Virus record (IMG/VR): IMGVR_UViG_3300032236_001613
Span: 62,001-126,000 of that record
DNA length: 64,000 bases
Strand: one strand, 5' to 3'
Made by a program: the position numbers and the translations under genes. Numbering within the stretch: position 1 is the stretch's first letter; each line of letters starts with the position of its first letter. Below, piece by piece: positions 18,522 to 64,000 of the stretch. A model generated the notes under the pieces. It did not search any database, was not told where the DNA came from, and saw only the letters and a list, made by a program, of their open reading frames with translations.

Positions 18522-18899
18522 TTACTTACTAGATGTCTGGACGAAGTGAGCTTGAGACCTATAGCCTAGTTCGCGTAGGCTAGTATTAATCAACTGCATG
18601 ACCGTCTTAGAAACGGGCGTGTCTGTTCTTGGAGGTTGAATACTCCAGGGCATTCCTCGCTCTTTGGGTTTCAAAAATGGATATCGATACTTCTCACCAT
18701 TAGGGTAACGAAACTCTTGCCCAGTTTTTTTGAGCAAGGTATTGTAAAGCCAATAAAGCATGTTGCTACGCTGACGTGCACGATCGTAGATATCTTTAGA
18801 AGATTGATCAATCTGTTCGATACCCCGACGCAAGGCACTGAGAGCTAATGCTTGAAGCTCGGGGTCTGGGTTACTTTCTAACAGTTCTTGTATCTGCAT
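18522..18899 (-). CDS. Late protein with capsid-targeting-like N-terminus
   Basis: MQIQELLE; TAAATA 4 nt upstream of ATG. Confidence 0.75.
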   Translation of the reverse strand: MQIQELLESNPDPELQALALSALRRGIEQIDQSSKDIYDRARQRSNMLYWLYNTLLKKTGQEFRYPNGEKYRYPFLKPKERGMPWSIQPPRTDTPVSKTVMQLINTSLRELGYRSQAHFVQTSSK

Positions 18900-18919
18900 A
18901 CTGTATTTATTTGTAGAAA

Positions 18920-19225
18920 GTTGCAGCGTCTTCGCTGGGTACGAAACGCTGCTGCCTCTTGATTTTTTGGAGATAAATCCTTCCAGCCCCGCTGAATCGG
19001 GCTCAAGTTATCCTACTTGTGCGACAAACAATAGAAACTTTCGTTTCTACCCGGCAAAGCCCTCATCATAACGACAATGACTCTACCCGCGGTTATACCG
19101 TTTCATTAGTCCCCTAGGAGCATAGCTAGCATTCAGACCGCTAGACGACACTAAGGGTTTCGCTTTCGGTTCAGGCATATGTAGTTATCAACATCACAGA
19201 CCGCTACAGCGGGGTTTTTGGTTTA
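18920..19225 (-). ncRNA. Candidate ~300-nt structured ncRNA downstream of tRNA-Leu
   Basis: ORF-free; long-range CCCCGCTG/CAGCGGGG, TAGAAAC-GAAA-GTTTCTA hairpin, GCAGCGT/ACGCTGC stem. Confidence 0.55.
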
Positions 19226-19230
19226 ATAGT

Positions 19231-19519
19231 TGGTGCCCTGAGCCGGACTCGAACCGGCACGCCAGTGGCGTCAGATTTTCTTACTACTACAGTTTTCACT
19301 GCCAGCTTGCGCTGTTTGTAGTCTGGACTATACCTTGACCTTAGCTATTGCTTTAGGTCCTTGCCGTCTAGTCTCTACACCTTCCTATTTCTAGGCTTGG
19401 CTCGGTATTAGCAGTTAAGCCTTCACCGAATTTGACAAGTTACATCTTAAAAGTTTCCTAATAAGAGCTCAAATCTTTTCTCTAAGTCTGATGCGTCTAC
19501 CTTGTTCCGCCATCAGGGC
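19231..19519 (-). tRNA. tRNA-Leu(UAA) split by a group I intron (exons 19484-19519 and 19231-19279)
   Basis: Acceptor GCCCTGA/TCAGGGC, anticodon stem TCAGA/TCTGA, loop CT-T^AA-AA after splicing, long variable arm, CCA. Confidence 0.92.
19280..19483 (-). mobile_element. Group I self-splicing intron (IC3-type, 204 nt, no ORF)
   Basis: P AAATTCGGTGAA, Q AATACCGAGC, R GTAGAGACTAGACGG, S AAGGTATAGTCC; follows a U and ends in G; inserted after U34. Confidence 0.9.
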
Positions 19520-19572
19520 AAATTATCAACTAACTATCTATTTAATATACGCTAATTATCTTCAGTTGTCAA

Positions 19573-19715
19573 ATGAGTTTTAGCCTCAGTTTACTATTCT
19601 CTTGCTACCTGATGTAAGTGCTTACAACACTTTTTACTAGTATCACAGGCTACCCGCTTCGAACAAGGTTAGGCTTGTACTTGTACTTGACCCGACGAGC
19701 TGGGCTAAAACTCAT
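19573..19715 (-). ncRNA. Candidate 143-nt rod-shaped ncRNA with its own promoter
   Basis: Perfect 13-bp terminal inverted repeat ATGAGTTTTAGCC; predicted +1 lies 7 nt after TATAAT of TTGACC-17-TATAAT. Confidence 0.6.
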
Positions 19716-19771
19716 AAAACTATTATATGCTAGCACCAGCATAAGGTCAACAATTAACAATAAATACTCCT

Positions 19772-20947
19772 ATGCGCATCCAAGAGCTACTATTAGAATA
19801 CAACCGACAGATTACCCTACAAAAGATAGGCGATCAGCTGACTCAAACAGCAGCTAGAGAACACACTACTGCAGAAGAGGCTATAGCTGCACTGGAAGAA
19901 ATGGATCCAACCGCAAATAAACAGTATACTCCTTGGCTGGCACGACAATACATTAAGCAGCAGTTTAGATTAGAGGACGCAGATAGAATACGCACAGTAC
20001 TAGATAACTTTGGTCAACTTAAATCAAGACTACCTGTTGAACAAAGAGATATAGGACGTATGGATTTTTACCAACTTGATGATTTAATTAATCAAGTATT
20101 AGATGTTAAACTAGAGGTGGATAAGCCTATTGAAGGAGGTACTTTCCCTATAGTTCCTGACTCCCGAGTCTTATACAACGGACCATTAGGGCAATTAGCT
20201 ATACCAGAAACCCGAGAAGCCAGTTGCGAATTAGGTCGTGGTACTGAATGGTGTACGGCTTATACAAAATCAAATAATCAATTTGATAGTTATAATCGAA
20301 GAGGTCCTTTATACGTATGGCGAGACAAAAATGGTGAGAAATATCAATTCCATTTCAGCGGCGGCCTACAAATGATGGATAGTCGAGATCGCCCTATAGA
20401 AAAAGATAAAATAGATTATTTTAGAAAACAGCATCCTGTACTTAAAAAATTGTTTCGACAAATAGAATCTCAAGCGTTAAAAGACCCTATATTAGCAACT
20501 CAGTATGCCGAAAAAGTAATTGGAGGACGTTGGCCCGAAGGCGAGGCCACAATAGCACAAACCTCACAGGCAGCATATTACTACGCTCGAAAAATAATCA
20601 AAAGTCGGTTTCCTGAGGGGGAAGCAGCATTATTAGAACCATCAACTGACATTAATTTTCTAATTTTTTATGCCGAACAAGTAATCAAAGGTCGTTGGCC
20701 TGAAGCTGAAGAAATGATAGCACAAAACCCATCGGCAGCATTTTACTACGCCCGACACATAATCAAAGGTCCTTTTCCTGAGGGGGAAGACGCAATAGCT
20801 CAAGATGACAGGCTCGCTTACAACTATGCTGTAGAAATACTTAAAGATCGTTTCCTAAAAGGAGAAAAGACTCTACAAAAGAGCAATGTTTATTGGTACC
20901 ATTACAAAAAACATTTCGGAATAAAACAACGTAAAGGTAAAACCTAA
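19772..20947 (+). CDS. Putative internal head protein with C-terminal helical repeats; paralog of 23127..24458
   Basis: MRIQELLLE; DPT..K.YT.WL, WCTA..N.F..Y..GP.Y, GEKYQFHF; ~6 repeats of A..YA..IIK.RWPEGE..I. Confidence 0.85.
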   Translation: MRIQELLLEYNRQITLQKIGDQLTQTAAREHTTAEEAIAALEEMDPTANKQYTPWLARQYIKQQFRLEDADRIRTVLDNFGQLKSRLPVEQRDIGRMDFYQLDDLINQVLDVKLEVDKPIEGGTFPIVPDSRVLYNGPLGQLAIPETREASCELGRGTEWCTAYTKSNNQFDSYNRRGPLYVWRDKNGEKYQFHFSGGLQMMDSRDRPIEKDKIDYFRKQHPVLKKLFRQIESQALKDPILATQYAEKVIGGRWPEGEATIAQTSQAAYYYARKIIKSRFPEGEAALLEPSTDINFLIFYAEQVIKGRWPEAEEMIAQNPSAAFYYARHIIKGPFPEGEDAIAQDDRLAYNYAVEILKDRFLKGEKTLQKSNVYWYHYKKHFGIKQRKGKT

Positions 20948-20949
20948 TA

Positions 20950-22125: not shown

Positions 22126-22130
22126 TAAGT

Positions 22131-22208
22131 TGGTGGGACTACTAGGGTACGATCCTAGACTCTCGCCGATTATGAGTCGGGGGTTTTAACCAATTAAACT
22201 ATAGTCCC
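22131..22208 (-). tRNA. tRNA with CAU anticodon (elongator Met or Ile2)
   Basis: Acceptor GGGACTA/TAGTCCC, loop CTCATAA, CCA; atypical T-loop ATCGTAC; paired G1-C72 argues against initiator. Confidence 0.85.
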
Positions 22209-22216
22209 TTAAAAAT

Positions 22217-22363: not shown

Positions 22364-22467
22364 TGCTGTGTCCTTGTGTGTAACTGTCTAAGTGCAGACT
22401 AATATACACTGATACTAGCAAATGGTCAAGGCCTCTGCAGCGGGGTATTAGGTTATAAATAATAATT

Positions 22468-23130
22468 ATGCGTGCACAAGAAGTATTTGAATCTTATAGA
22501 TGGAGCTGGTCAGACGATGATGCAGAACAGCTCTCTAGTAAGATCCCACCCAAATATCTAGAAAGATTACGTAATCTCACTGTCCGGGATCGACGAGTTA
22601 GCAACTTTATGGATACCCATAACATTAACTTGGTTCAATTTCTCACAAGATTTCAGGAACAAAAGGGTTTAGATCCAGTAAACAAAACTGAGTTAGCATC
22701 TGATTTTATTGTTAAGATTCCGAAAAATAATCCTGAAGGTTTTTATTTTGCAAATAAATCTAATGAAGTTAGAGCCGGTGCCGAATTAGATATTGCAGAT
22801 CAAGCACATACAGATCTATATCGCGTTTATATGAAGACCAAACTTCGCGCAGAAAAGATAAACACTCCATTTACATTAACATTAAAAGAAGCCGCCGACA
22901 TCTTTAAAGCACAGGGAGGCAAATGTGCATTAACTGGAGAAAAGTTAGGAAAAGGACTAGGATCATCACCCAGTATGGATCAACGAGTTCCTAGAGTGAG
23001 AGGCGGCCCTGGTTATACTAAAGACAATGTACAATGGGTTACCGCACAGATTAACTTTGCTAAACAGAATTTAACTAATGAAGAATTTGCAGATCTTTGT
23101 AAAAAAGTTGCTGCACATTCCGGGAATTAG
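22468..23130 (+). CDS. HNH-like (bba-Me) endonuclease domain protein
   Basis: QGGKCALTG..SPSMDQ..GYTKDNVQWV..IN.AK; N-terminus MRAQEVFE. Confidence 0.7.
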   Translation: MRAQEVFESYRWSWSDDDAEQLSSKIPPKYLERLRNLTVRDRRVSNFMDTHNINLVQFLTRFQEQKGLDPVNKTELASDFIVKIPKNNPEGFYFANKSNEVRAGAELDIADQAHTDLYRVYMKTKLRAEKINTPFTLTLKEAADIFKAQGGKCALTGEKLGKGLGSSPSMDQRVPRVRGGPGYTKDNVQWVTAQINFAKQNLTNEEFADLCKKVAAHSGN

Positions 23131-24458: not shown

Positions 24459-24460
24459 TA

Positions 24461-24871: not shown

Positions 24872-24875
24872 ACGA

Positions 24876-25268
24876 TTATGCCACCGTTGGTCTTATGGAT
24901 TTTTGTAATCCTTGTATATTTTTACCTAGATCGTCTTGATCTTTTTGTATTTGTTGACTTTTTTGTACAATTGCATCAAGTTCTTTCTGTTGTTCTGGGT
25001 TGTTAGCTAGTGGTAGACCTTCGGGATTTTTAAGAGCTTGTTTGGCAAGATTGTATCCGCCGGAAAATGCTCCAGCAGCACTGCCCATTTTAGCTGCTCC
25101 TACCTGTGCATTTGCCACAGTAGAACCCAATGCTGATCCAACTTTGCCAGCTAACTTACTAGCAATACCACCACTGCCTGGCGTATCTGTACTACCTGCT
25201 GTCGGAGTTCCAATAGTAGTAGTTCCACCCTGTTCAATTAAGTCAATATAATATCTTAGGTTTTTCAT
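24876..25268 (-). CDS. Gly/Ala-rich putative head protein
   Basis: MKNLRYYIDLIE; late box 5 nt upstream. Confidence 0.75.
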   Translation of the reverse strand: MKNLRYYIDLIEQGGTTTIGTPTAGSTDTPGSGGIASKLAGKVGSALGSTVANAQVGAAKMGSAAGAFSGGYNLAKQALKNPEGLPLANNPEQQKELDAIVQKSQQIQKDQDDLGKNIQGLQKSIRPTVA

Positions 25269-25306
25269 AAAGATATTTAGCTGAGTTTAAACAATAAATA
25301 GATTGT

Positions 25307-25498
25307 ATGCGCATACATGATTTATTAGAAAACTTTGCAGATGGTAAAGGTCCAGGACGTCCAGGCGATAGTCAACGTCATGGTATTCCAAAGAAAGCCA
25401 CAATGGCTCAGCTACAGAAAGCTGCTCGAGCTAAAGGACGTAAAGGACAATTAGCACGTTGGCAAATTAATATGCGTCGTGGTAAGAAGAAAAAGTAA
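25307..25498 (+). CDS. Small basic putative head protein (NFADGK type)
   Basis: MRIHDLLE-NFADGKGPGRPG; K/R-rich; late box. Confidence 0.8.
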   Translation: MRIHDLLENFADGKGPGRPGDSQRHGIPKKATMAQLQKAARAKGRKGQLARWQINMRRGKKKK

Positions 25499-25501
25499 TC
25501 T

Positions 25502-25702: not shown

Positions 25703-25707
25703 TAGGC

Positions 25708-26280
25708 TTATCCCCAGCTAATACTAGCTCCATTTTCTTGAGCAAATTTTACCATTTTGATCAGTGCATCAATATATCTATCAATTTGACTTTGACTACG
25801 ACCCACATCTATCATTCTAGGACCAGTATGTCCGATATGTGTAACACCTTGATCGTCAGTATGCTGGCGGCCCATAGGACCACGTTCATCACTAGGGTCC
25901 TGAGTATATTGGCTAGTATTTTGATTCTTTAACTGGATAAGTCTACGCATAAGCTTAGGTAGATCTTGATGATGTATTATGCCCGAATAGTCAGTATCTG
26001 TAATTCCTAGCATACGTTGTATCTCAAACCCGTTGGAATTACTTACACTTAGTTCAGGAGCACTAGAAACCCATTCTTCGGTTTCTCCCGCACCATCACA
26101 GCGTCTGCATGTTTCTTCGCCGGTACTCCACCGCTGTTTTCCTGTGCCATCACATACAAAACAAGGCTCCATTTGTTTGCTTTGCCATTCCATACTGGAC
26201 CAAACTTTATCCCCGTCATAATCTGTTAATTTTACAGGGTTAAAGGTCATGCCTTCAATTAATAAATCTTTAATACGCAT
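25708..26280 (-). CDS. Zinc-finger (CxxCxGxG x2) putative head protein
   Basis: MRIKDLLIE; CFVCDGTG, CRRCDGAG. Confidence 0.8.
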   Translation of the reverse strand: MRIKDLLIEGMTFNPVKLTDYDGDKVWSSMEWQSKQMEPCFVCDGTGKQRWSTGEETCRRCDGAGETEEWVSSAPELSVSNSNGFEIQRMLGITDTDYSGIIHHQDLPKLMRRLIQLKNQNTSQYTQDPSDERGPMGRQHTDDQGVTHIGHTGPRMIDVGRSQSQIDRYIDALIKMVKFAQENGASISWG

Positions 26281-26304
26281 AAAATTATTTATGCCAAACT
26301 GATC

Positions 26305-27081
26305 TTACTTTGCAGGCGGGGGCGACTGTACAAAAAGTTTCTGTGCAGCGATGCTATCTACAGGCGGCGCAAGTATAGTCCAATCAGATCCTAACACAGG
26401 TGTTAGATGAATATGACTACGAGGTATCCAATACTTATCTACATCAATATCTAACTGATCAACCATATTACTGATAACCGAATCTAAACAAACTAATGCG
26501 TTAGCGTTTTCGATAATAGTCAACCAATCAAAAATACTACCTGTAATGCCTTCTCGAATATCGATGCGTTGCCAATCCGATGGCAAACTTGAAAGGTCAG
26601 GATTAGTTTTAAAGCTGCTGCCTTCCAAATGTGTTACGTAGTAATTGGTATTCTTTACTAGACGATCGTACAATGCGTTTTCGGTTACTGTGTCTCTAGT
26701 AATGCATTCAGATAACTTCCATTTATTTTTAAAAGGAACTCCAGCTTTAGTATACTTAAACTCATCAAATTTCTGTATTTGGAACCAAGGAACGTCGCTG
26801 AGTTCTGGGATTACATTTAGGCTCTGATATAAGCAGACTATTTCATCACAGCCCGCTTTGTTAAGTAGCTTCATCGGATCCTCGTAGAAGAATTTACCAG
26901 CTGCGTCGGTTACCATAGGAATCCAATTTACCCAAGGTGCAGTGTTGATAAAACTTGGTAAAAATTCCTGACAAATTGGCCAATAAATTTGTACACCTTC
27001 GTTGTAATAATAACGTGCAATAGGCAACGCCATGCAAATATCACCTAATCCTCTACTCTGTATAATGCCAAGTTTCTTCAT
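26305..27081 (-). CDS. Glycosyltransferase, GT9/heptosyltransferase-like
   Basis: IIQSRGLGDICMALP, DWL.IIENA..LVCLDS. Confidence 0.7.
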   Translation of the reverse strand: MKKLGIIQSRGLGDICMALPIARYYYNEGVQIYWPICQEFLPSFINTAPWVNWIPMVTDAAGKFFYEDPMKLLNKAGCDEIVCLYQSLNVIPELSDVPWFQIQKFDEFKYTKAGVPFKNKWKLSECITRDTVTENALYDRLVKNTNYYVTHLEGSSFKTNPDLSSLPSDWQRIDIREGITGSIFDWLTIIENANALVCLDSVISNMVDQLDIDVDKYWIPRSHIHLTPVLGSDWTILAPPVDSIAAQKLFVQSPPPAK

Positions 27082-27160
27082 ATGTTCCTCTTAAGTAAAA
27101 TAATATACGTATTTAATATTTGTCTAATATCTAAATTATAATTTTGATATAAATAATTGT

Positions 27161-27424
27161 ATGAGAGCAAGAGACTTCATCACTGAAAAGAAACGTAAAA
27201 TTAAATCGCCTACACGTAGCCAATGCTCAGTAGGCAAATCTACTATGAGCAACGTAAGACGCTCACAGTGTGTTTCACTAGGATATCTAGCACATGATTC
27301 CGATCATACTATGGGTACAGGTACTCAGGGTAAAAAAGGTACAGGAGTACCACTTAGAGGTAAAAAAGCTAAGAGTGAAAAGCATGGTGGTCCTGTTAAA
27401 AACTACGGCGGTAGCCACAGCTAA
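27161..27424 (+). CDS. Small basic putative head protein
   Basis: MRARDFITE; K/R/G-rich; TATAAATA 5 nt upstream. Confidence 0.75.
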   Translation: MRARDFITEKKRKIKSPTRSQCSVGKSTMSNVRRSQCVSLGYLAHDSDHTMGTGTQGKKGTGVPLRGKKAKSEKHGGPVKNYGGSHS

Positions 27425-27457
27425 GTTAAATATTAGGGAACACCCTGATATCTTTAA

Positions 27458-28012: not shown

Positions 28013-28038
28013 AGTATATTACTATACGAGGTAAGAAT

Positions 28039-29013: not shown

Positions 29014-30321
29014 ATGCATCACATTATTCAAGAACTTGCTGCAGACAATAGCCGCCTAGCTAAGGAAGCTATCCTTAAGCGTGAAGCCAACGCTGGTAAC
29101 GAAGAATTCTTCGAAGGTTGCCGTCTTGCGTTGGATAACCTTATGTCATTTGGTGTTAAGAAGGTTCCTACTTATTCTGGTCCAGATGGGCAAGGATTGC
29201 CGTGGGCTGCATTTACACAACTAGCAAATAGTCTTTATCGACGAGAGCTTACTGGGCATGCTGCCCGTGACGCTATTGAACTAGCAATGAGTGCTAGCAC
29301 CAAGGATCAGTGGAATCACTGGTACCGATTGATTTTGTTAAAAGATCTCAAGTGTGGCGTTAGTGAAAAGACCATTAACAAAGTACTTAAGAATACTAAG
29401 ATTAAGCCTGTGCCAGGATTCTCCTGTATGTTAGCTCACGACGGTGCTAATCATGAAAAGAAAATTGCAGGTAAGAAGTTACTTGAACCTAAGCTTGACG
29501 GTGTGCGTGTACTCACTGTTATTAATACAGTTAATCGCACCGTAACACAATACACTAGAAATGGTAAGATCCTAGAAAACTTTTCGCATATTACACAAGC
29601 TATCGAAGAACATATCGACCAGTTTGGACGTAGCTGTGTCCTTGACGGTGAAATGATTAGTACTAGCTTTCAGGCTCTTATGAAGCAGGTTCATCGCAAG
29701 GAAAATGTACAAGCAGATGATGCTGTGCTAATGTTGTTTGACATTATTCCTCTAACTGAATTCCAACTGGGTAAGAGTGCATTAGGGCAGCGTCGACGTA
29801 GCAATTTGCTTAAATCTTTTAAACCAGTGTTTGACCAAATTGGTAACATTGGTGTTATTCCGCAAACTGAAGTGGACCTTGATAGTTATGTAGGCGAGCT
29901 GCAGTTTAAAGAATTTAACAAAGAAGCTATTGATAATGGCTATGAAGGAATAATGATAAAAGACGTCGACGGAGTTTACGAATGTAAGCGTTCTGTCAAA
30001 TGGCTTAAGCAAAAACCTTATATTGAAGTAAGTCTTGCTGTAGTTGGCCTTGAGGAAGGCACTGGCAAGAATGAAGGACGCTTGGGTGCACTTATCTGTG
30101 AAGGCGAGGACGACGGGAAGCACATTCGAGTTAACGTTGGTAGTGGATTTACTGATGAACAGCGTCGAGAATTTTGGGAAGAACAAGACATCATGATTGA
30201 TCAAGTTGTAGAAATTCGTGCAGATGCTGCTACACTTAATCAAGATAGCGACAACATCTATAGTTTGCGTTTTCCAAGATTTCTACGGTTCCGTGGATTT
30301 AGCGTAGGAGAAAAAATCTAA
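29014..30321 (+). CDS. lig: ATP-dependent DNA ligase
   Basis: EPKLDGVR (motif I), LDGEM, FDI, EGIMIK, WLKQK, C-terminal OB fold SLRFPRF. Confidence 0.95.
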   Translation: MHHIIQELAADNSRLAKEAILKREANAGNEEFFEGCRLALDNLMSFGVKKVPTYSGPDGQGLPWAAFTQLANSLYRRELTGHAARDAIELAMSASTKDQWNHWYRLILLKDLKCGVSEKTINKVLKNTKIKPVPGFSCMLAHDGANHEKKIAGKKLLEPKLDGVRVLTVINTVNRTVTQYTRNGKILENFSHITQAIEEHIDQFGRSCVLDGEMISTSFQALMKQVHRKENVQADDAVLMLFDIIPLTEFQLGKSALGQRRRSNLLKSFKPVFDQIGNIGVIPQTEVDLDSYVGELQFKEFNKEAIDNGYEGIMIKDVDGVYECKRSVKWLKQKPYIEVSLAVVGLEEGTGKNEGRLGALICEGEDDGKHIRVNVGSGFTDEQRREFWEEQDIMIDQVVEIRADAATLNQDSDNIYSLRFPRFLRFRGFSVGEKI

Positions 30322-30542
30322 TGACTGAAGAAGCAGCAAAATACAATGTTAATCGTCCGCAGGTTAAAACTGTTAAAACCAAAGAAGAACAGTATCTATC
30401 AATTCTTAAAGAATTTGCTGATGAATATAATATAATAGGATGTTATCCTGCAATTACTAAAGAAGAAATTGCAGATAGGCTCAATCCAATTGCTAAAAAA
30501 ATCTATAAAATTTTGGACAAACTGGAGCGCGGTAATGGATGA
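30321..30542 (+). CDS. Hypothetical protein
   Basis: TAATG coupling. Confidence 0.6.
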   Translation: MTEEAAKYNVNRPQVKTVKTKEEQYLSILKEFADEYNIIGCYPAITKEEIADRLNPIAKKIYKILDKLERGNG

Positions 30543-30723
30543 GCTTGATTCTTATCACACGCACGAAGCACTAGATCGTATAAATTGTGTGCTAATTATG
30601 ATAGAGGAACTGCTAAGAAAGCATCCCTATATTGAACAAAATGAAGATATTAAAGAATCTGTTGATCATGCAGCCGATCATCTCAGCAGAGCTTATCAAC
30701 TAATCGGCCAACGACATTTATAA
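30535..30723 (+). CDS. Small conserved phage protein
   Basis: HEALDR..L.KHP..AYQ.IG; start at ATG 30535. Confidence 0.7.
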
Positions 30724-30740
30724 AGGAGATCGTAAGTAAA

Positions 30741-30959
30741 GTGGCAAAAGAATCAGCAATTGAATTAGAAGGGTTTGTAGAAGAAGTGTTGCCGAATGCA
30801 ACATTTAAGATTAAAGTTAACGAAAAGCACAGCTTGCTTGCTGTGATTTCTGGCAAAATGCGCCAGAACAAAATCCAGATTCTCACTGGTGATCGTGTGC
30901 GGGTTGAAGTTTCCCCCTATGATCTAACACGTGGTCGAGTAGTTTATCGAGAGAAATAA
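30741..30959 (+). CDS. infA: Translation initiation factor IF-1
   Basis: [40 protein letters not shown]. Confidence 0.97.
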
Positions 30960-30960
30960 G

Positions 30961-30992
30961 AAAAAGCGCAGTGTAAAAACTGCGCTTTTTTT
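30961..30992. terminator. Bidirectional rho-independent terminator
   Basis: AAAAAGCGCAGT-GTAAAA-ACTGCGCTTTTT between convergent infA and HNH. Confidence 0.9.
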
Positions 30993-31512
30993 ATGGGCTG
31001 ATATATTTTACCCAAACTGGATGGATGCGATCGTCATCCACTGACAGTTTGCGCTTTTCTGCGACTAATTGGTGATAAGTGGGCTTAACCGGCGTCTTCT
31101 TAGGACGAATGCGGTGATCGTTACCTTTAGTTGAGTTACATTTTCCACATGCGCAGACAGTATTCTCGTATGTGTTTTTACCACCATGACTTAATGGTAA
31201 TACATGATCGAGTGTAGCATCTTTGCGACTAACGTCTACGCCGCAGTATTGGCAGATGTAACCATCGCGTAGAAACACATTCTGCTTACTCCAGCGAATG
31301 CTTGCTTTGCGTTTTTCATATTCTTTTAAAATAACTACTGCTGGTACGCGAGTTTCCCAATTTACGCTGCGAACAATCCAGTCTTCGTGCCATTCAAGCA
31401 CTACGACCTTGTCCAGAACTAATTGAAGAATTGCTTCTTTCCAGCTCATGGTACTGAGTGGAATCATTGAAACAGGGCTACCGTCAGTGTTAAGTTTTAA
31501 CGTTGCTGCCAT
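30991..31512 (-). CDS. HNH endonuclease (McrA-like)
   Basis: RD...CQYCG..TLDHVLP.S.GG...N.V.AC..CN..K. Confidence 0.9.
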   Translation of the reverse strand: MAATLKLNTDGSPVSMIPLSTMSWKEAILQLVLDKVVVLEWHEDWIVRSVNWETRVPAVVILKEYEKRKASIRWSKQNVFLRDGYICQYCGVDVSRKDATLDHVLPLSHGGKNTYENTVCACGKCNSTKGNDHRIRPKKTPVKPTYHQLVAEKRKLSVDDDRIHPVWVKYISP

Positions 31513-31643
31513 ATTATACCTATATTTAGCTGTTTTGAAACATAGATTTATTATAACTAGGAATTACCAAAACAGCAACCAAAACTTTACCAACGCCTTT
31601 GAATAAATATCCATATACGGTACAACGGTAGGACCTTTAAAAC

Positions 31644-33041: not shown

Positions 33042-33056
33042 TAGGAACGTAATTTA

Positions 33057-45601: not shown

Positions 45602-45637
45602 TTTTTAAGTATAAATATAGAATAATAAGGAAAAATA

Positions 45638-45874
45638 ATGGCGCTTAACCATATTTCTACAGCAACTTCAAGTACTGCAATAGCTACTAAACTCTATCGC
45701 AGAGACTTAAAGTTGAACTTAGCACAAACTAAGCGTCAGAGCAGTACCGCTACGTGGCATAGAGTATTAAATATAATATCAGGAACGCATGTTGCTTATG
45801 TTAGTACATCAACTGCTACTGTTAGAGGAACCACTAGCCCTACTGTTGGGCATCCGTGGACATTAGGAGTATAA
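45638..45874 (+). CDS. Small late protein
   Basis: TATAAATA at 45610 and AAGGA RBS. Confidence 0.7.
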   Translation: MALNHISTATSSTAIATKLYRRDLKLNLAQTKRQSSTATWHRVLNIISGTHVAYVSTSTATVRGTTSPTVGHPWTLGV

Positions 45875-51524: not shown

Positions 51525-51579
51525 GGTGAGTGCCATTGTTATAGTTAGAAGATATAGGTAATGAGGAGTTAAATACGGC

Positions 51580-54500
51580 ATGTCATTAAATTTTCCACCA
51601 GGCGCTACAACAGGAACTACTTACAATGGGTATACCTACGATGGCACTAAATGGGTGTCCACTAGCACTATACCTACTAATCAAAGTTTATATACTACTG
51701 ACGTAGTTACGTTTGCTGGGATTAATGCTACAGGCGATATTATACCTGCAGCCGATAATACATATAACTTAGGATCGCCAGCAAATAAATGGAAGCACGT
51801 ATTTGTAACTAGTGGATCTATATATCTCGGCGATGTTAAATTAAGTACACAAAATGGTCAACTAGTAATACAAAATGTCAGCTATACATATAATACTGTA
51901 ACCAACATTATTAATACCGAAACTGTTATTAATACCTATGCTGCTCCTACTATTGTTCCGTTTTTTACAGTTACCAATGCTTTTGTCGCCGGTAATATAA
52001 TAACTACATCTACAGATGCCAGTACAACCACAGTAACAGCTAATGCACTATATGTAGCAGGTGGCGTAGGTATTGGAAAATCACTTTATGTAACTGGTCC
52101 TGCTATATTTAAAAATGATGTAGTATTTGGTGGATCAACTAATTACGTCTACAGCACTAATACAGTTTATACAGATAATATTCTAGAATTACATGCTCCT
52201 CCCGGAGGAGTCAACGGGCAGTGGACATTTAATGACGGCAAAGACATAGGATTAAGATTCCATTATTACAGTAATACTGATACTAATGCAGCTTTAGTAT
52301 TAGCACAAGATTCTGGAAATTTAGAGTGGTATAGTTCAGGTGCTGAGGGTAGTTCTACTTTTGTTGGCGTTACTTATGGTAACATCAAAGCTGGCGGAAT
52401 AATTCTAGTTAATAGTACAGCATCTGTTAATACACAAACCGGTGCATTAGTTGTTGCCGGTGGTGTAGGTGTTGGTGGAGACATCAATATCGGAGGTTCT
52501 ATTTACATTAACGGATCTGCAGTAGGCTATGGCTATACTGGATCGTTAGGATACGTAGGTAGTATAGGTTATGCAGGATCACAAGGTATCACCGGGTATA
52601 CAGGCAGTACTGGATATACAGGTAGTATAGGTTATGTAGGCAGTATTGGTTATACAGGTAGTACAGGATATACTGGTAGCATTGGTTACATAGGATCAAT
52701 AGGTTATACCGGTAGCTTTGGATATGTAGGCAGTGCAGGATTGATTGCTAATCCATATTCAGGTATTTTAACAATAACTAATACCACAAATTCTATTGGA
52801 GCTACTACAGGCGCTTTAGTAATTACTGGCGGGTTAGGGGTTGGCAAAGACGTTAACATTGGCGGTAACTTAAATGTTAATGCAATTACTGCTACTAATT
52901 TAACTCTTAAAAATAATCGAATTGTCTTAGGCAATGGAACTCCCGTTAATACTACTGTGTCGAACGCAATAATGATCGGTAACGGTGCAGGTTCTGGTAT
53001 TACATCCGGTGACCCTAATCTTATTGTTATAGGATATGGTGCATACCAAATTGGATCAGGTTCGACCGCAATTAGTAATAATATTGCTATAGGCACAGCT
53101 GCTTTACAAGGAGGTAATTTAGCAGGTTCGGCCGGAGCCAATATAGCAATTGGTTATAATGCTTTCTCATTTGGGCCTACCGGAGATTATAATATTGCGT
53201 TAGGTACTAACGTTGGTGCTAATATGACTCAAGCTACTTACCTAGTAGCTGTAGGATTTAACGCTGCTTATGGACTTTCTGCAAAAAGTACAACCGCAAC
53301 ATCAGTTGGAAACATAGCAATAGGATATAAAGCATTATATGCATCAGCGTTTCAAGCTGACGGTATAGTTGCTATTGGTCCAAATGCTGGTTACAATAGT
53401 GCACAAGGTAATTTCTCTATTGTCATAGGAAATTCAGCAACTAGTGTAGCAAACTCCATAGTTTTAAATGCTTCAGGAACTAAGGCTGTAAGAGGAACAG
53501 TATCTGGATTTTATGTTAATCCGGTGAGAGCAGACAGCAGCACCAGTGCTACAACTTGGGCTGTATTTTATAATCCAGCAACATATGAACTTACAACAGC
53601 TAGCACATTTGTTGGATATTATGGTAGTATCGGATATAATGGAAGTATTGGATATGTAGGTAGCGCGGGTACTAATGGATATAATGGAAGTATTGGGTAT
53701 ACCGGAAGTATCGGTTATATAGGATCTTTAGGATATACTGGTAGTCGTGGTTATACAGGAAGTATCGGGTATACCGGCAGTGCCGGAGCAGCAAGTACTG
53801 TACCAGGTCCAAAAGGCGATATCGGTTACACGGGCAGCGTGGCAACCCCATATCAACTAGTAAACAGTGATTATACACTTCAACTGAGTAATGCCGGTGA
53901 TGTAACTATCAATAATACAGGTATTAACGGATCAGGATTATACTTTGACGGAACTACTAATCTTTTGATAAGTCCTGGTATACAGTTTGGCACATCAGCA
54001 TTTACAATGGAAGTATGGTTTCAAATTGATCCCGGATATACTGACCAGTACGCACTTATTGGTCCACCTAGTTCCAACGTGGGGTCGTTAGGAGCAAGAG
54101 GAGATGAAAACGGAGCAGGAATTACTTATGATGCGGGGAACGGAAGTACCCAATTTGTTTATGCTCAAGGAGCAATCACTACCGGAGTACCGCATCATAT
54201 AGCCTTTGTTAGAGATAGTAGCAACAACTGTCAGGTATTCTTAGATGGTGTTGCCTGTACCACCGGAGTTCAAACTATCCCCGATGACCTAACTTCAAAC
54301 GTAACAGATACACACGAAATAGGCGGGTGGAACGATGGTACTTATGGTCAATATTATCTGCATGGCTTCATCACCGGAGTCAAAATAGTAGTAGGCAATA
54401 ACTTATATAACCCTAATGCTAGCAATATAACTGTACCTTCGTTGCCATTTACAAATAGTACCGGAACTCAATTATTGATTAATCCTACAGATTCTGTATC

Positions 54501-58917: not shown

Positions 58918-58964
58918 TTTCTAAATTCCTTTCTGCTATTATATGCGTATATTAAATACGGCAT

Positions 58965-61900
58965 ATGAAAAAGATCAAAATAGCGATTATAGACTGCGTA
59001 GGTCTTAACTACGATGGAACAACTTTACAGAAAAAAGGCATCGGCGGCTCAGAAAGTTCAATCATTTCTGTAGCAAAAGAACTAGTTGCACTAGACTTTG
59101 AAGTCTCAATTTTTAATGATTGTAACAGCCCAGATACTAAGCCCGGTATTTACGATGGTGTTAACTACTATCCTATTAGAACACTAGGTCAACGTGAGTT
59201 TGGCTTTGATATTGTTATCAGTCAAAGAACAGTAATACCATTTACTCCGCTTGAACTTTATGATCAAGTACGTCAGCCACCTCCTAGAGATTTTGATCCA
59301 AATATTTTCCGTCAAGTACAACGAACCGAACAGTTAAAGATCTTATGGCAGCAGGATACGTTTATTTGGGGTGATGCCTTACTTGAACAGTTATGTGTTA
59401 AAGGCTACATTGATGAGATTTTTAATCTCAGCGATTGGCACATTAGTTACACTACACATTCTAGTCACGGACCACGACGTAACTTTGAAGTATTAAAACG
59501 TTATATCTATCATACACGCAATGCTATTAATCGTTGGATAGATTGGGTTGATATTAAAAAGAAAGATCCTAACCTATTTGTCTATAATGCTTCGATTACT
59601 AAAGGTATGGTGCCTTTAGTACAAAAGATCTGGCCTAGACTTAAACAACATTTACCTAATGCTAAACTAAAAATTATCGGCGGTTATTATCGTTTCAATA
59701 ACGAACCAGTAAACGAGGCACAACAGAATTGGATTAACTTACAGAATTCTGTAGCACATGATAAGTCTGTCGAGTTTACAGGAATTATTCCGCAACCTAA
59801 GATTGCGGAAATTATGGCCGAAGCCAGTTACAATCTCTATCCCGGTGCATTTCCTGAAACATCAGGTATCAGCATTATCGAAAGTATCAACTATAATACA
59901 CCTATAATCGGTACACGCTTCGGTGCCATGGAAGAATCTGCAGCCGAAACAGCAGGTTACTATATCGATTTTCCAGTAGAGCCTAACGGACTATTTCCTA
60001 ATATTAACACCGACGATCAGGTTAATCGCTATGTTGATTTAGCATTGCGTGTTATAAGAGATCCTTACCTACATCAACAAAAGCAATATGCTTGCAATGC
60101 AGCTAAAGATGTTAGTACTTGGGATACAGTTGCATTACAATGGAAACAGCATTTTTATTATAAATTAGGATTAGAATTATCTGCCGAGGAACAACAGGCA
60201 GTCGATTGGATTAACTATCGTGTGCACAAAGTATTTGGTAAACGATTTGCTAATCCTGAAGAAGTTGTTGTTACCCAAAAACCCGAAAAGGTAACTGCAT
60301 TACCCGGACCACGTCCTAAGATTGCATTCGTTGATATTGTTGGCATGGCATACGATGGCGACACTCTTAATCGCAAGGGCATGGGCGGTAGCGAAAGTGC
60401 GGTTATTCTTAACAGTCGAGAACTAGCTAAAATTGGGCTTGATGTTACTGTGTTTAACGCTTGTAACGAAGATGGTAGTAGTCCTGGTATGTATGATGGG
60501 GTCACTTATCGACCTCTTGCAGATTTACAATCAACTACTGATGTTTTTGATGTAGTTATAAGCAGTCGTGTAGTTACACCTTTTATTACAGAACCATGGT
60601 ATAATTATCCCCAAACAACAAATAGAAAAATTGATTATCGTTGTTTTGAAAATATGCGTCGTAACGCAAAACTAAAAGTGTTTTGGATGCACGATACATT
60701 CTGTTGGGGCGATGACATTCTAGAAGATCTTGTTTGGACAGGTGCTATTGACGAAGTATGGACACTAAGTGACTTCCATGCATTCTATGTAATGAATGCT
60801 GCACATCCGCGCATGCGCATGATGGAAGTTATGCGTAGTCGCACATGGACTACTAGAAACGGATTAGTAAAATACTTTACTGAAGTAGACATTGCTGCCA
60901 AAGACCCTAACTTGTTTATATTCAACGCTAATATGAGCAAGGGCCTCGATCCTTTATTAAATCTTGTTTGGCCTCGAGTTGTAAAACAAATACCTAAAGC
61001 ACGTTTAACCGTAATTGGCGGCCATTATAAACTAGGTGCAGCATTTGCGCATAATGATGAAGAATCTGAGTTTATGAAGTTAGCTGGGCCGCACATGAAC
61101 AACCCTTCTATTACGTTTACAGGAATCATTAGTCAAAGAGAAGTTGCTGAAATTTCTGCAAAGGCTAGTTACTTCCTGTATCCAACTGCATTTCCTGAAA
61201 CTTACAGCATTAGCACACTAGAATCTCTGTACGCTAATACTCCTATGATCAGCTGTAGATTCGGTGCATTAGAAGAAACTGCTAGCCCCGAAGGCTACTT
61301 GATTGACTATTCCACAACACCGAATAGTTTATTTCCAAACGTTAATCCAGAAGAGCAAGCAGACCGTCTAGTTGAATTAGTTGTTAATGCATACAATAAT
61401 CCTAAAGAACACCAACGCAGAATGAAGGCATTAGATGTTATTAAAGATTTAGCCGGGTGGGATGTTGTTGCATTAGAATGGAAACAGCATATTTACAATA
61501 AGTTAGGCTTGTACTTAAGCCGTAGCGAAAGTCAGCAAGCTACTTACACTAAAAGCAAATATAGAAAAATCTTTAACCGTCGTATGACTACTGCTGAAGA
61601 ATGGCTCGTTCCTCCACAGGAATTATCCGATCAACAGAAGATGGTTATTATTAGTCCTTTTTACAATGCTGAACCTTACATCGAACGTTGTATTGCTAGC
61701 GTAGCAGCACAAGACTACGATCGTTACGAGCATTGGTTAATTGACGATGCTAGTACCGATAACGGATTTAAAGTTGCAGAAGATTATATCAATCAGCTAC
61801 CTGAAGAAATACAAAGTAAATTTAGACTAATCCGTAATGATGAAAACCAAGGTGCAGTCTATAATCATATGAGTGTTATTAGAGATTTAGATCCTAATGA

Positions 61901-63050
61901 TGTTATTATGATGTTAGACGGCGACGACAGTTTAATTAATCGTCCTGATGTATTAAGATACTTTAATGCTGTTCATTGGCATCACGATTTTACTTATGGG
62001 TCATGCTGGAGTATGGTTGATCAAATTCCATTAATCAGTCAGCCTTATCCTCCAGAAGTTATTGAATCTAGAGATTATAAAAACTATCATTTTAATTGGA
62101 AGATTCCGTATACTCATTTGAGAACAATGAAAGCCAAACTATTGTTAGAAGTTCCTAACGAGGCTTTCCAAGATAATCAAGGCAATTGGTTTAAAGCCGG
62201 CGGAGATAACTCTACGTTCTATAACGCATTGTATAATTGTGATCCTGATCGGATTTATGTGGTTCCTGATATTGTTTATAACTACAACGATGCAAGTCCT
62301 ATTAACGATTATAAGGTTAATAGAGAAGAGCAAGATCGAGCTATTTCGGTTATTTTTGGAAATAATGATCCTATTGATCGTGCACCAAAAAAACCCGAAA
62401 CAGTTAGCCAACCAATTGCATTATCAGCTCCTGCTGTAAATATCGGCCCGGCTAAACGTATTTTAATAGCTATTCCAACTAACAGAAATATTGAAGCTCA
62501 GACTTTTAAAAGTATATACGATTTAATTATACCCGACGGATACGTTGCTGAGTTTCAGTATTTCTGGGGATATCAAGTAGATCAAGTACGTAATCTAATT
62601 GCACACTGGACGATACACAATGGATACGATTACTTGTTTGCTGTTGATAGCGATATTTCGTTTGCACCAGACACATTAGTAAAACTATTATCGCATAATC
62701 GAGATATTGTTTCAGGTATATATATTCAACGCATTCCAGGAACACATATTATTGAAATTATGCGTAAAAATCCGCATGGTGGTGTTAGCCATGTTGATTG
62801 GAATACTATTAAAGGGCAAGGCTTAGTACCAATTGACGGATGTGGATTTGGTTGCGTACTAGTTAAATCTGAAGTGTTTAAAGCTATACCATATCCTCAC
62901 TTCCTATATCATAGTGCAATTGATCATAAAAATACTTTAAGTGAAGATGTTCATTTCTGTAATCAAGCTAGAGATAGAGGATTTACACTTTGGGCAGATA
63001 CTAGTGTAATTTGCGATCACACTGGATCTTGGACATTTAAGGTAAACTAA
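58965..63050 (+). CDS. Four-domain glycosyltransferase (GT4-like x2, GT2, GT-A)
   Basis: Duplicated KIA..D..G..YDG..L..KG.GGSES; P.YNAE.YI..C..S..DDASTD..LDGDD; VDSD..GFGC.L..EDVHFC. Confidence 0.9.
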   Translation: MKKIKIAIIDCVGLNYDGTTLQKKGIGGSESSIISVAKELVALDFEVSIFNDCNSPDTKPGIYDGVNYYPIRTLGQREFGFDIVISQRTVIPFTPLELYDQVRQPPPRDFDPNIFRQVQRTEQLKILWQQDTFIWGDALLEQLCVKGYIDEIFNLSDWHISYTTHSSHGPRRNFEVLKRYIYHTRNAINRWIDWVDIKKKDPNLFVYNASITKGMVPLVQKIWPRLKQHLPNAKLKIIGGYYRFNNEPVNEAQQNWINLQNSVAHDKSVEFTGIIPQPKIAEIMAEASYNLYPGAFPETSGISIIESINYNTPIIGTRFGAMEESAAETAGYYIDFPVEPNGLFPNINTDDQVNRYVDLALRVIRDPYLHQQKQYACNAAKDVSTWDTVALQWKQHFYYKLGLELSAEEQQAVDWINYRVHKVFGKRFANPEEVVVTQKPEKVTALPGPRPKIAFVDIVGMAYDGDTLNRKGMGGSESAVILNSRELAKIGLDVTVFNACNEDGSSPGMYDGVTYRPLADLQSTTDVFDVVISSRVVTPFITEPWYNYPQTTNRKIDYRCFENMRRNAKLKVFWMHDTFCWGDDILEDLVWTGAIDEVWTLSDFHAFYVMNAAHPRMRMMEVMRSRTWTTRNGLVKYFTEVDIAAKDPNLFIFNANMSKGLDPLLNLVWPRVVKQIPKARLTVIGGHYKLGAAFAHNDEESEFMKLAGPHMNNPSITFTGIISQREVAEISAKASYFLYPTAFPETYSISTLESLYANTPMISCRFGALEETASPEGYLIDYSTTPNSLFPNVNPEEQADRLVELVVNAYNNPKEHQRRMKALDVIKDLAGWDVVALEWKQHIYNKLGLYLSRSESQQATYTKSKYRKIFNRRMTTAEEWLVPPQELSDQQKMVIISPFYNAEPYIERCIASVAAQDYDRYEHWLIDDASTDNGFKVAEDYINQLPEEIQSKFRLIRNDENQGAVYNHMSVIRDLDPNDVIMMLDGDDSLINRPDVLRYFNAVHWHHDFTYGSCWSMVDQIPLISQPYPPEVIESRDYKNYHFNWKIPYTHLRTMKAKLLLEVPNEAFQDNQGNWFKAGGDNSTFYNALYNCDPDRIYVVPDIVYNYNDASPINDYKVNREEQDRAISVIFGNNDPIDRAPKKPETVSQPIALSAPAVNIGPAKRILIAIPTNRNIEAQTFKSIYDLIIPDGYVAEFQYFWGYQVDQVRNLIAHWTIHNGYDYLFAVDSDISFAPDTLVKLLSHNRDIVSGIYIQRIPGTHIIEIMRKNPHGGVSHVDWNTIKGQGLVPIDGCGFGCVLVKSEVFKAIPYPHFLYHSAIDHKNTLSEDVHFCNQARDRGFTLWADTSVICDHTGSWTFKVN

Positions 63051-63052
63051 TA

Positions 63053-63763
63053 ATGAAAATAGCTATTTTGGTTAGTGGTCAGCCAAGATTCCACAAAATG
63101 TCTTTCTACGATCACCTTACAAAGTTTAAAGGCTATAGTCAAGTTGATTGGTTTTTTTACATTTGGAAAAATAACGAAAACATCAAAAACATTCCGCCTG
63201 AATGGATCAATATTTCCGATGTTAATTGGGCTGTTGAAAAAATTAAAAAAAATCTACCTGTTAGCCATATACTTTCACGTTTTCATTTAGGAATGTATAA
63301 TATTCACGAATATCATACGTTGCCGTCAATTGGCTCAATAAATGCTATTAATTTACAATTTTATAGTTTAAAACAAGCCGATTTACTCCGTCAAGAAACA
63401 GAACAAACGTGGGGAAATTACGATTTAGTTGTTAGAACTAGGCTAGACAGAGAAATTACAAAAGAGATTAATCTAATAGAATTAAAAAACAAATTAGATT
63501 ATAACCCAAATCTCGTTTTCACACCAAATAATTACAAACATTATTATAATGAATATGGTATGTGTGACGCTTTTGCTATAACTTCTTCTAAAAATATGTC
63601 AATCTATAGTGATTTAATTAATTTTATTCCATCTTACTATCAGCAAGGGCTATATCCTCATCCTGAATCTTTGTTAAATTATCATTTAATAAAAAACTCT
63701 TTAGAATTAGACGAAACTTTGGAAATTAACCAATCATATAGCTACGAGTATGTAGACTGGTAA
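63053..63763 (+). CDS. Putative glycosyltransferase-related protein
   Basis: MKIAILVSGQPR..YDLVVRTRLD..D.FA..PE.LL. Confidence 0.6.
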   Translation: MKIAILVSGQPRFHKMSFYDHLTKFKGYSQVDWFFYIWKNNENIKNIPPEWINISDVNWAVEKIKKNLPVSHILSRFHLGMYNIHEYHTLPSIGSINAINLQFYSLKQADLLRQETEQTWGNYDLVVRTRLDREITKEINLIELKNKLDYNPNLVFTPNNYKHYYNEYGMCDAFAITSSKNMSIYSDLINFIPSYYQQGLYPHPESLLNYHLIKNSLELDETLEINQSYSYEYVDW

Positions 63764-63778
63764 TCATATAAATACAGG

Positions 63779-64000
63779 ATGTTACTACGTGAATTATTTG
63801 AAGACTCAAAAAACCCCGATTTAATAGAAATTTTTCGAAAATTTTTTCCTTTAGCTATGAAAGAAATTGGGCTAAAGGATTTACCCAAAATTGAATTAGT
63901 TGACCGTGTTCAAGACAGAGTTCAACCAACGTTTGGTAAATTTGTTAATAATACCAATACAATATATTTAGGAATTCTAAATCGTCATCCTTTAGATATA
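63779..64000 (+). CDS. Partial late protein with capsid-targeting-like N-terminus (runs off right edge)
   Basis: MLLRELFED..PTFG.F..I.L.I.NRHPLDI; TATAAATA 4 nt upstream. Confidence 0.75.
   Translation, partial: MLLRELFEDSKNPDLIEIFRKFFPLAMKEIGLKDLPKIELVDRVQDRVQPTFGKFVNNTNTIYLGILNRHPLDI

What the first reader, a model, noticed from the sequence alone, without database searches (positions are those of the whole stretch)
18899..63781. Late genes appear to be leaderless mRNAs
Seen: in 10 genes TAAATA lies only 4-6 nt before the ATG, with no Shine-Dalgarno in between, whereas early genes have strong AAGGAG sites. Known: T4 gp55 initiates about 5-6 nt downstream of TATAAATA, and leaderless mRNAs are read by 70S ribosomes with different initiation-factor dependence. 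Inference: a translational class switch from SD-led early to leaderless late mRNA, possibly served by phage IF-1 and the bL12-like protein and resistant to SD-dependent shut-off.
Basis: partly seen in the sequence, partly recalled or inferred. Interest (0 to 1): 0.75.

Follow-up and report, generated by a model that had tools for sequence, protein, structure and literature searches.

The report
Late promoters placed for leaderless mRNAs
In this uncultured 328-kb freshwater jumbo phage and its many relatives, a short T4-like late promoter box sits at a fixed distance from the start codon of many late genes, so the mRNA should begin at the AUG itself with no ribosome-binding leader; this layout has not been described for T4-type late promoters, and it has not yet been confirmed by RNA data.

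Summary
All 10 sites in the stated range, plus an 11th at 18458-18472, have TAAATA 4-6 nt before the first ATG of an ORF.

Genome-wide (328,068 bp), the TAAATA-to-ATG spacing peaks sharply at 5 nt: 5, 19 and 9 ORF starts at spacings 4, 5 and 6, against 0-4 elsewhere. There are 34 such genes. They include the large terminase, tail tube, baseplate wedge and tail fibres, and 30 have no Shine-Dalgarno (SD) 4-mer.

- A gp55-family late sigma factor is encoded in the genome.
- By the T4 numbering, a 5-nt spacer puts +1 on the A of ATG.
- In 55 of 58 distinct terminase orthologue upstream regions, a covarying terminator hairpin, TAAATA, a 5-nt spacer of variable sequence and ATG are all kept. Two of the three exceptions carry an SD instead.
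- T4 and PA5oct lack this layout.

No RNA run was listed, so transcription start sites remain inferred.

The "early SD-led, late leaderless" switch is only partly right. About as many TAAATA boxes lie 15-35 nt upstream of starts, and 75% of those have an SD. Sigma70-type promoters (TATAAT-N6-ATG) show the same leaderless geometry. The proposed roles of IF-1 and the bL12-like protein are untested, and the bL12 match is weak.

The parts
18458..18472 (-). TAAATA box (18467-18472), 6-nt spacer ttatct, ATG (18458-18460) of a 78-aa ORF.
18897..18909 (-). TAAATA box, 4-nt spacer cagt, ATG of a 125-aa ORF beginning MQIQELLES. First gene at a divergent junction.
19761..19774 (+). aTAAATA box, 5-nt spacer ctcct, ATG of a 391-aa ORF beginning MRIQELLLE. 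Divergent junction.
22456..22470 (+). TATAAATA box (full T4 consensus from 22454), 6-nt spacer, ATG of a 220-aa ORF with a C-terminal endonuclease VII/HNH-like domain.
25266..25279 (-). TAAATA box, 5-nt spacer tcttt, ATG of a 130-aa ORF. One of two back-to-back boxes inside a 38-nt divergent intergenic region.
25295..25309 (+). aTAAATA box, 6-nt spacer gattgt, ATG of a 63-aa ORF beginning MRIHDLLE. Partner of the box above in the 38-nt divergent region.
26278..26291 (-). aTAAATA box, 5-nt spacer atttt, ATG of a 190-aa ORF beginning MRIKDLLIE.
27150..27163 (+). TATAAATA box (from 27148), 5-nt spacer attgt, ATG of an 87-aa ORF. Divergent junction.
27081..27115 (-). Contrast case. TAAATA box (27110-27115), then a 28-nt leader containing AAGAGGA, then the ATG (27079-27081) of a 258-aa ORF. 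This is a leadered, SD-bearing late-type promoter in the same 79-nt divergent region as the leaderless one.
45610..45640 (+). Contrast case. TATAAATA (45610-45617), then a 20-nt leader with AAGGA, then the ATG at 45638 (78-aa ORF).
51570..51582 (+). TAAATA box, 4-nt spacer cggc, ATG of a 2445-aa tail-fibre-like ORF. Ambiguous, because GAGGAG lies immediately 5' of the box, 11 nt from the ATG.
58953..58967 (+). TAAATA box, 6-nt spacer cggcat, ATG of a 1361-aa multi-glycosyltransferase ORF. Its orthologues have TAAATA-N9 (G001) and TATAAT-N7 (G002).
63769..63781 (+). TATAAATA box (from 63767), 4-nt spacer cagg, ATG of a 426-aa ORF beginning MLLRELFED. The ORF runs off the window.

Best explanation
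(A)TAAATA is the core of this phage's gp55-type late promoter. In about 34 genes of the genome, 11 of them in the window, the box is placed so that host RNA polymerase carrying the phage's gp55-like sigma starts on, or within a nucleotide or two of, the A of the ATG. That gives a leaderless mRNA with a 5'-terminal AUG, translated without a Shine-Dalgarno contact.

Read as ATAAAT plus a 6-nt discriminator, the box sits exactly where a sigma70 -10 hexamer sits in the TATAAT-N6-ATG promoters of the same genome. Leaderless expression is therefore a general habit of this phage clade under both promoter types, and is more frequent among late promoters. It is not a strict early-to-late translational switch.

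Shown here: the motif, its spacing peak, the absence of an SD, the gene classes involved, the presence of the sigma gene, the conserved terminator directly upstream, and conservation across relatives. Inferred: the actual 5' ends, the dependence on gp55, and the mode of ribosome binding.
For: 1. Spacing peak. Spacings 4, 5 and 6 give 5, 19 and 9 ORF starts in this genome, 14, 15 and 1 in relative G001, and 5, 12 and 3 in G002. Six control hexamers show no peak.
2. Expected start site. T4 numbering puts TAAATA at -11 to -6, so a 5-nt spacer gives +1 = A. Sigma70-type TATAAT peaks at exactly N6, with 6, 9 and 13 cases.
3. SD content. 30 of 34 such genes lack any SD 4-mer, whereas 36 of 48 genes with TAAATA 15-35 nt upstream have one.
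4. Base before the ATG. It is a pyrimidine in 32 of 33 cases, against 68 of 152 SD-led genes (p = 3.6e-9). I read this as the known Y(-1)R(+1) start-site preference.
5. Operon position. 16 of 34 lie at divergent junctions or directly after terminators, against 44 of 343 other genes (p = 6e-6).
6. Terminase orthologues at 60-87% identity. 55 of 58 distinct upstream regions keep hairpin, T-run, 3 nt, TAAATA, N5 and ATG. The spacer varies in sequence but not in length. The hairpin is 97.8% paired, with 5 pairs changed on both sides, and 0 of 500 shuffles match it.
7. Exceptions. In two of the three (L089, L098) and in one baseplate-wedge orthologue, an SD appears where the adjacent box is lost.
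8. Gene content. The genes are canonical late genes: TerL, tail tube, baseplate wedge, adaptor, fibres and virion proteins.
9. Sigma factor. A gp55-family sigma gene lies next to a gp47-like gene.
10. 5' structure. The first 45 nt of these ORFs are less structured (-2.4 against -4.2 kcal/mol, p = 5e-4).
Against: - There is no transcript evidence. No RNA run was listed for this DNA, so start sites are predicted only.
- 14 of 34 boxes lie in short same-strand junctions. Read-through transcripts would carry those genes as SD-less internal cistrons.
- A 4-nt spacer needs a start one base closer to the box than the T4 rule gives.
- No gp45 clamp homologue was detected with phrog_223, and gp33 was not searched, so the late machinery may differ from T4's.
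- The host is unknown, so efficient leaderless translation there is assumed.
- The lower 5' structure is partly confounded by lower GC content.
- My gene set is heuristic.
Confidence: 0.78

Rival explanations
1. TAAATA-N5 acts in the RNA as a non-SD translation initiation element. It could be an A/U-rich site bound by ribosomal protein S1, or a Bacteroidota-type A-rich motif. On this reading the mRNAs start further upstream.
For: - GeneMarkS-2 describes a Flavobacterium TAAAAA-like non-SD motif peaking about 7 nt before starts (PMC6028130).
- 14 of 34 sites lie in short same-strand junctions where a polycistronic message is plausible.
- The genome's 37% GC would fit freshwater Flavobacteria.
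Against: - The same box occurs 15-35 nt upstream with an SD in between.
- A conserved, covarying terminator ends 3 nt before the box at the terminase gene, and terminator-like hairpins with T-runs lie directly upstream at three other genes, including tail tube.
- Complete TTGACA-N17-TATAAT promoters show the matching N6 geometry.
- The related hexamers TAAAAT and AAAATA show no peak.
- The genome uses strong AAGGAG sites and TTGACA/TATAAT promoters, unlike Bacteroidota systems.
- The pyrimidine at -1 has no evident role in ribosome binding.
Confidence: 0.1
2. A true programmed switch. Late in infection the phage disables SD-dependent initiation and, with its own IF-1 (and the bL12-like protein), favours initiation at 5'-terminal AUGs.
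For: - Early-cluster genes carry strong AAGGAG, while late-region genes carry weak SDs or none.
- The share of leaderless geometry is higher for late-type boxes (about 34 against about 48 leadered) than for sigma70-type promoters (9 against several tens).
- The IF-1 homologue scores 78 bits and is present in all nine clade members checked, but absent from PA5oct and fHe-Yen9-04, which lack the geometry.
Against: - Many late-type promoters have SD leaders, and sigma70-type promoters also drive leaderless-type genes.
- The IF-1 co-occurrence may reflect one clade, that is, one evolutionary event.
- IF-1 is also found in Phosso, which lacks the geometry, and in Lak phages, which were not checked for it.
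- The bL12-like hit covers 33 residues and falls below the Pfam cut-off.
- No RegB homologue was found.
- To my knowledge, IF2 and IF3 rather than IF1 are the factors shown to modulate leaderless initiation in E. coli.
Confidence: 0.1
3. Chance, base composition or mis-called starts.
For: The raw pattern count in the window is only about twice the shuffled expectation. My gene calls are heuristic.
Against: - All 11 window sites sit at the first ATG of an ORF.
- The spacing peak is sharp, absent for control hexamers, and absent in T4 and PA5oct.
- The layout is conserved at orthologues with variable spacer sequence.
- N-terminal peptides are conserved from that ATG onward.
Confidence: 0.02

Closest known systems
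T4 late promoters (TATAAATA, read by gp55 with gp33 and the gp45 clamp)
   Same: - An A/T-rich -10-type box with no -35 element.
- A gp55-family sigma is encoded.
- The box precedes structural and packaging genes on either strand.
- A/T-rich downstream segment.
   Different: - The core is shorter: (A)TAAATA. Only 25 full TATAAATA copies occur in the genome.
- In T4 the box lies 12-35 nt before starts, with a mode of 28 and none at 4-8. Here a third to a half of the boxes abut the ATG.
- The sigma is 305 aa with an N-terminal extension.
- No gp45 homologue was found.
Predicted ATAAATA late promoters of Rak2-like jumbo phages (CBB, GAP32) and the PA5oct group
   Same: - The same motif and gp55-like sigma; CBB likewise lacks detectable gp33 and gp45 (PMC5259590).
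- PA5oct carries the closest cultured sigma, at 47% identity.
   Different: PA5oct and Yersinia phage fHe-Yen9-04 show no excess of TAAATA-N4-6-ATG (33 against 47 and 18 against 47 for the reversed control). The abutting layout is a trait of the freshwater clade.
Leaderless genes of Actinobacteria and Deinococcus-Thermus (GeneMarkS-2 group C), and lambda cI from PRM
   Same: - A -10 box localised 6-8 nt from the start codon of first genes in operons.
- No SD.
- A dual system in which internal genes keep ribosome-binding sites (PMC6028130).
   Different: Here the box is mostly that of a phage-encoded alternative sigma, in a virus whose other genes use strong AAGGAG sites. The host is unknown.

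Membership tests
T4-type (gp55-dependent) late promoter | The genome encodes a gp55-family sigma factor | tested here: met
   305-aa ORF at G000 295185-296102. T4 gp55 tblastn E 1.3e-8; phrog_12791 E 8e-86; phrog_234 E 3.6e-24. It lies beside an SbcD/gp47-like gene.
T4-type (gp55-dependent) late promoter | A TATAAATA-like box without a -35 element, lying upstream of late (virion and packaging) genes | tested here: met
   (A)TAAATA precedes TerL, tail tube, baseplate wedge, adaptor, fibres and virion proteins. No conserved positions were found further upstream. The core is shorter than T4's 8-mer.
T4-type (gp55-dependent) late promoter | A gp45 sliding clamp and a gp33 co-activator are present | tested here: inconclusive
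   phrog_223 (gp45) gave no match in the genome. gp33 was not searched. Rak2-like phages also lack detectable homologues (PMC5259590).
T4-type (gp55-dependent) late promoter | Transcription starts about 6 nt after the box and depends on the sigma | not testable with these tools
   No RNA run was listed.
Leaderless mRNA | The 5' end of the transcript coincides with the start codon | not testable with these tools
   Only geometry is available. The 5-nt mode matches T4 numbering (-13 for the first T). TATAAT-N6 matches the sigma70 rule.
Leaderless mRNA | No SD, and a -10-type box localised a fixed few nucleotides from the start | tested here: met
   30 of 34 genes have no SD 4-mer, and the spacing peaks sharply at 4-6.
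Leaderless mRNA | AUG rather than GUG or UUG as the start codon | tested here: inconclusive
   GTG/TTG-opened ORFs at spacings 4, 5 and 6 number 0, 0 and 1. Non-ATG starts are rare in this genome anyway, so the test has little power.
Bacteroidota-type A-rich non-SD ribosome-binding site | The motif precedes most genes, including operon-internal ones, in a system that does not use SD | tested here: not met
   Only 34 of 378 genes carry it. About 250 genes have SD 4-8-mers. Sigma70-type TTGACA/TATAAT promoters are present.

The most novel reading that the evidence does not exclude
A widespread clade of freshwater jumbo phages has moved a large share of its late gene expression, and part of its earlier expression, to 5'-terminal-AUG mRNAs, and it carries its own IF-1 to tune host ribosomes toward this pathway. 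That would be a virus-encoded reprogramming of translation initiation mode.
Probability: 0.1. Interest if true: 0.85.

Novelty: new variant of a known kind. Interest (0 to 1): 0.62.

Why it matters
T4-type late promoters and leaderless mRNAs are both textbook items, but I found no paper linking them. A search for "TATAAATA" with "leaderless" returned nothing, and the "gp55" with "leaderless" hits were unrelated.

If start-site mapping confirms the prediction, abundant structural proteins such as tail tube and terminase are made from SD-less, leaderless messages. This would hold across a phage clade with hundreds of members in lakes. It would imply either a host with efficient leaderless initiation or a phage-induced change in the ribosome.

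There is also a practical consequence. Gene callers that demand a ribosome-binding site will mis-place starts in these genomes. The fixed box-to-ATG rule gives a simple way to annotate late transcription units.

Tried and rejected
- DNA search against cultured phages: blastn of window 29014-33041 found no match.
- RNA evidence: no RNA run was listed for two stretches. A metagenome-contig scan with the tail tube protein gave only 4 loci, too few to look for contig ends piling up at the ATG.
- Host inference:
  - IF-1 is 50-65% identical to many phyla and is uninformative.
  - psbA and nblA are absent.
- RegB-like nuclease as an SD shut-off effector: none found.
- gp45 clamp by phrog_223: none found.
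- IF-1 as a specific partner of the geometry: the co-occurrence holds within the clade, but Phosso has IF-1 without the geometry. I left this as an untested lead.
- Nucleotide-level "downstream box" as the cause of the shared ATGCG... starts: rejected. The codons vary synonymously (CGC, CGT and AGA for Arg; CTA, TTA and CTG for Leu), so the conservation is at the peptide level.
Full report
**Context**

The window is G000:C1:62001-126000 of a 328,068-bp IMG/VR virus record (37% GC, CheckV completeness 92%). DNA runs that hold it are freshwater and lake metagenomes. No cultured phage matches it at the DNA level. By its gp55-like sigma, the nearest cultured relatives are Pseudomonas phage PA5oct and its kin (46-48% identity), followed by Rak2-like jumbo phages.

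**The observation**

TAAATA followed by 4-6 nt and ATG occurs 11 times in the window.

The bare pattern is only about twice as frequent as in shuffles: 11 against 5.7 +/- 2.1. What matters is the positional association:
- Each ATG is the first start codon of an ORF of 63-2445 aa.
- An in-frame stop lies 9-108 nt upstream (9-33 nt at ten of the eleven sites; 108 nt at 18899).
- No SD-led in-frame alternative exists within 40 codons.

Across the whole genome, ATGs that open ORFs of at least 60 aa follow TAAATA at spacings 4, 5 and 6 in 5, 19 and 9 cases. Other spacings up to 16 give 0-4. A second, broad hump lies at 17-30. Six control A/T-rich hexamers give no peak.

In a heuristic set of 378 genes, 34 have the abutting box. 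Of these, 30 have no SD 4-mer, and for 29 the ATG is the first start in the ORF.

One window site, 51570-51582, has GAGGAG directly 5' of the box and is ambiguous.

**What the box is**

The 34 genes include the large terminase, tail tube, baseplate wedge, a head-tail adaptor, tail fibres and virion proteins.

The genome encodes a gp55-family sigma (305 aa) beside a gp47-like gene.

The CBB paper predicted an ATAAATA late promoter and a gp55-like sigma in Rak2-like phages (PMC5259590).

TAAATA also occurs 15-35 nt before 48 gene starts, and 36 of those have an SD between box and ATG, against 4 of 34 for the abutting class. The box therefore works at variable distance when an SD is present. That is the behaviour of a promoter, not of a ribosome-binding site.

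**Why leaderless**

- Start-site geometry. The T4 review numbers the first T of TATAAATA as -13 (PMC2988020). TAAATA then spans -11 to -6, and a 5-nt spacer puts +1 on the A of ATG. Five is the observed mode.
- Same geometry for sigma70-type promoters. Read as ATAAAT plus six bases, the box is positioned exactly as in the sigma70-type promoters of this genome. TTGACA-N17-TATAAT followed by ATG occurs 9 times at spacings 5-8, with a mode of 6. TATAAT-N6-ATG peaks at exactly 6 in this genome and two relatives, with 6, 9 and 13 cases.
- Base before the ATG. It is a pyrimidine in 32 of 33 cases, against 68 of 152 SD-led genes (p = 3.6e-9). From my own knowledge, this fits the Y(-1)R(+1) preference of bacterial RNA polymerase.
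- Operon position. 16 of 34 genes are at divergent junctions or directly after a terminator, against 44 of 343 other genes (p = 6e-6). In the window, the 38-nt region between 25268(-) and 25307(+) holds two back-to-back boxes.
- 5' structure. The first 45 nt of these ORFs fold less stably. This point is weak, because it is partly a GC effect.

**Comparative evidence**

The terminase protein finds 377 relatives in IMG/VR. Among 58 distinct upstream regions (60-87% protein identity), 55 keep the order hairpin, T-run, 3 nt, TAAATA, 5 nt, ATG. One has a 4-nt spacer.
- The 5-nt spacer varies freely in sequence but not in length, and it ends in T or C.
- The hairpin is 97.8% paired, with five pairs changed on both sides. 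No shuffle out of 500 reaches this, and slid controls fall to 31-60% paired.
- It is therefore a working terminator that leaves 14 nt or fewer for any leader.
- The two other exceptions (L089, L098) have an SD (agagg, aaagga). In L089 the box lies 35 nt upstream.

Between this genome and two complete relatives (G001 at 38% GC and G002 at 48% GC), the abutting box is kept at tail tube, terminase, four further structural or unknown genes and others. One baseplate-wedge orthologue has swapped it for AAGGA.

T4 shows no box at 4-8 nt; its mode is 28. PA5oct, fHe-Yen9-04 and Phosso show no excess. The layout is a derived trait of the freshwater clade.

**Limits**

- No RNA run was listed, so all start sites are inferred.
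- Fourteen boxes lie in short same-strand junctions, where read-through messages are possible.
- A 4-nt spacer requires a start one base closer than the T4 rule. To my knowledge, that lies within the usual flexibility of start-site choice.
- The host is unknown.

Within the window, the leftward small-gene cluster does carry strong AAGGAG sites, and the late region carries weak SDs or none. Three results argue against a strict class switch:
- Leadered, SD-bearing late-type promoters are about as numerous as the leaderless ones.
- Operon-internal late genes use SDs or coupling.
- Sigma70-type promoters also produce leaderless-type genes.

On the proposed helper proteins:
- IF-1 (window 30741-30959, 78 bits) is itself SD-led with a GTG start.
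- It is found in every clade member tested and in no relative lacking the geometry except Phosso; Lak and other phages also carry IF-1 but were not checked for the geometry. This may be a single evolutionary event, so it is only a lead.
- The bL12-like protein (window 1821-2291, minus strand) is a partial match below the Pfam cut-off.
- No RegB homologue exists.

**Verdict**

- The leaderless inference is well supported by geometry and conservation, and I put it at about 0.8.
- The class-switch and IF-1 ideas are not supported as stated.
- I found no paper joining T4-type late promoters with leaderless mRNAs, so I rate this a new variant of known kinds.

Noticed in passing
window 19231-19519 (-): A tRNA-Leu(UAA) gene is split by a 204-nt group I intron (Rfam RF00028, 64 bits). 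The intron sits between U34 and A35, which from my own knowledge is the site of the cyanobacterial and plastid tRNA-Leu intron. Joining the exons gives a clean ARAGORN tRNA-Leu(taa). A TTGACA-N17-TATATT promoter lies at 19572-19544 (-). This could hint at the host, but psbA and nblA are absent.
   Followed up: partly
window 18899(-), 19772, 20950, 22468, 24458(-), 24871(-), 25307, 26280(-), 27161, 63779; about 20 genes genome-wide: Many otherwise unrelated ORFs begin with a shared peptide M-R-I-x-E-L-L-x-E (MRIQELLLE, MRIHDLLE, MRIKDLLIE, MQIQELLES, MLLRELFED and others). Codons vary synonymously. A T4 gp21-type prohead protease (PF03420, 89 bits) lies at G000 307528-307956, beside two such genes. 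From my own knowledge, the motif resembles the T4 internal-protein capsid-targeting leader, which is cleaved after L/I-x-E. These may be packaged head proteins.
   Followed up: partly
G000:C1:26682-29258 (outside the window; L045): The large terminase is 858 aa here, against about 528 aa in most relatives. It contains a LAGLIDADG_3 domain (residues 290-359) and a weak Hint match, so an intein probably sits in the ATPase domain.
   Followed up: partly
window 30741-30959 (+): A full-length IF-1 homologue (72 aa, PF01176 at 78 bits) with a GTG start and AAGGAG 12 nt upstream. It is present in all clade members checked. It is also present in Sinorhizobium phage Phosso and in Lak phages.
   Followed up: partly
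window 1-18300 (-): The leftward cluster of small genes is very regular. A repeated aaaacc-N-tag/tgt-TATAAT box is followed about 20 nt later by AAGGAG and an ATG. A second recurring upstream word, GTTGAGTTAG, appears before the genes ending at 132, 10398 and 13928.
   Followed up: no
window 58965-63050 (+): A 1361-aa protein with several glycosyltransferase domains (GT1/GT4-type and GT2-type) lies behind a late-type abutting box, between a giant fibre gene and further late genes.
   Followed up: no
window 243-314 (-) and 22134-22208 (-): Two further tRNA genes lie in the window (Rfam tRNA, 74 and 56 bits).
   Followed up: no
window 43311-44138 and 44142-44969 (+): Two adjacent 275-aa ORFs of equal length (possibly paralogues; not compared) start 3 nt after the preceding stop codon, with no SD. 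Termination-reinitiation coupling inside the late operon seems likely.
   Followed up: no
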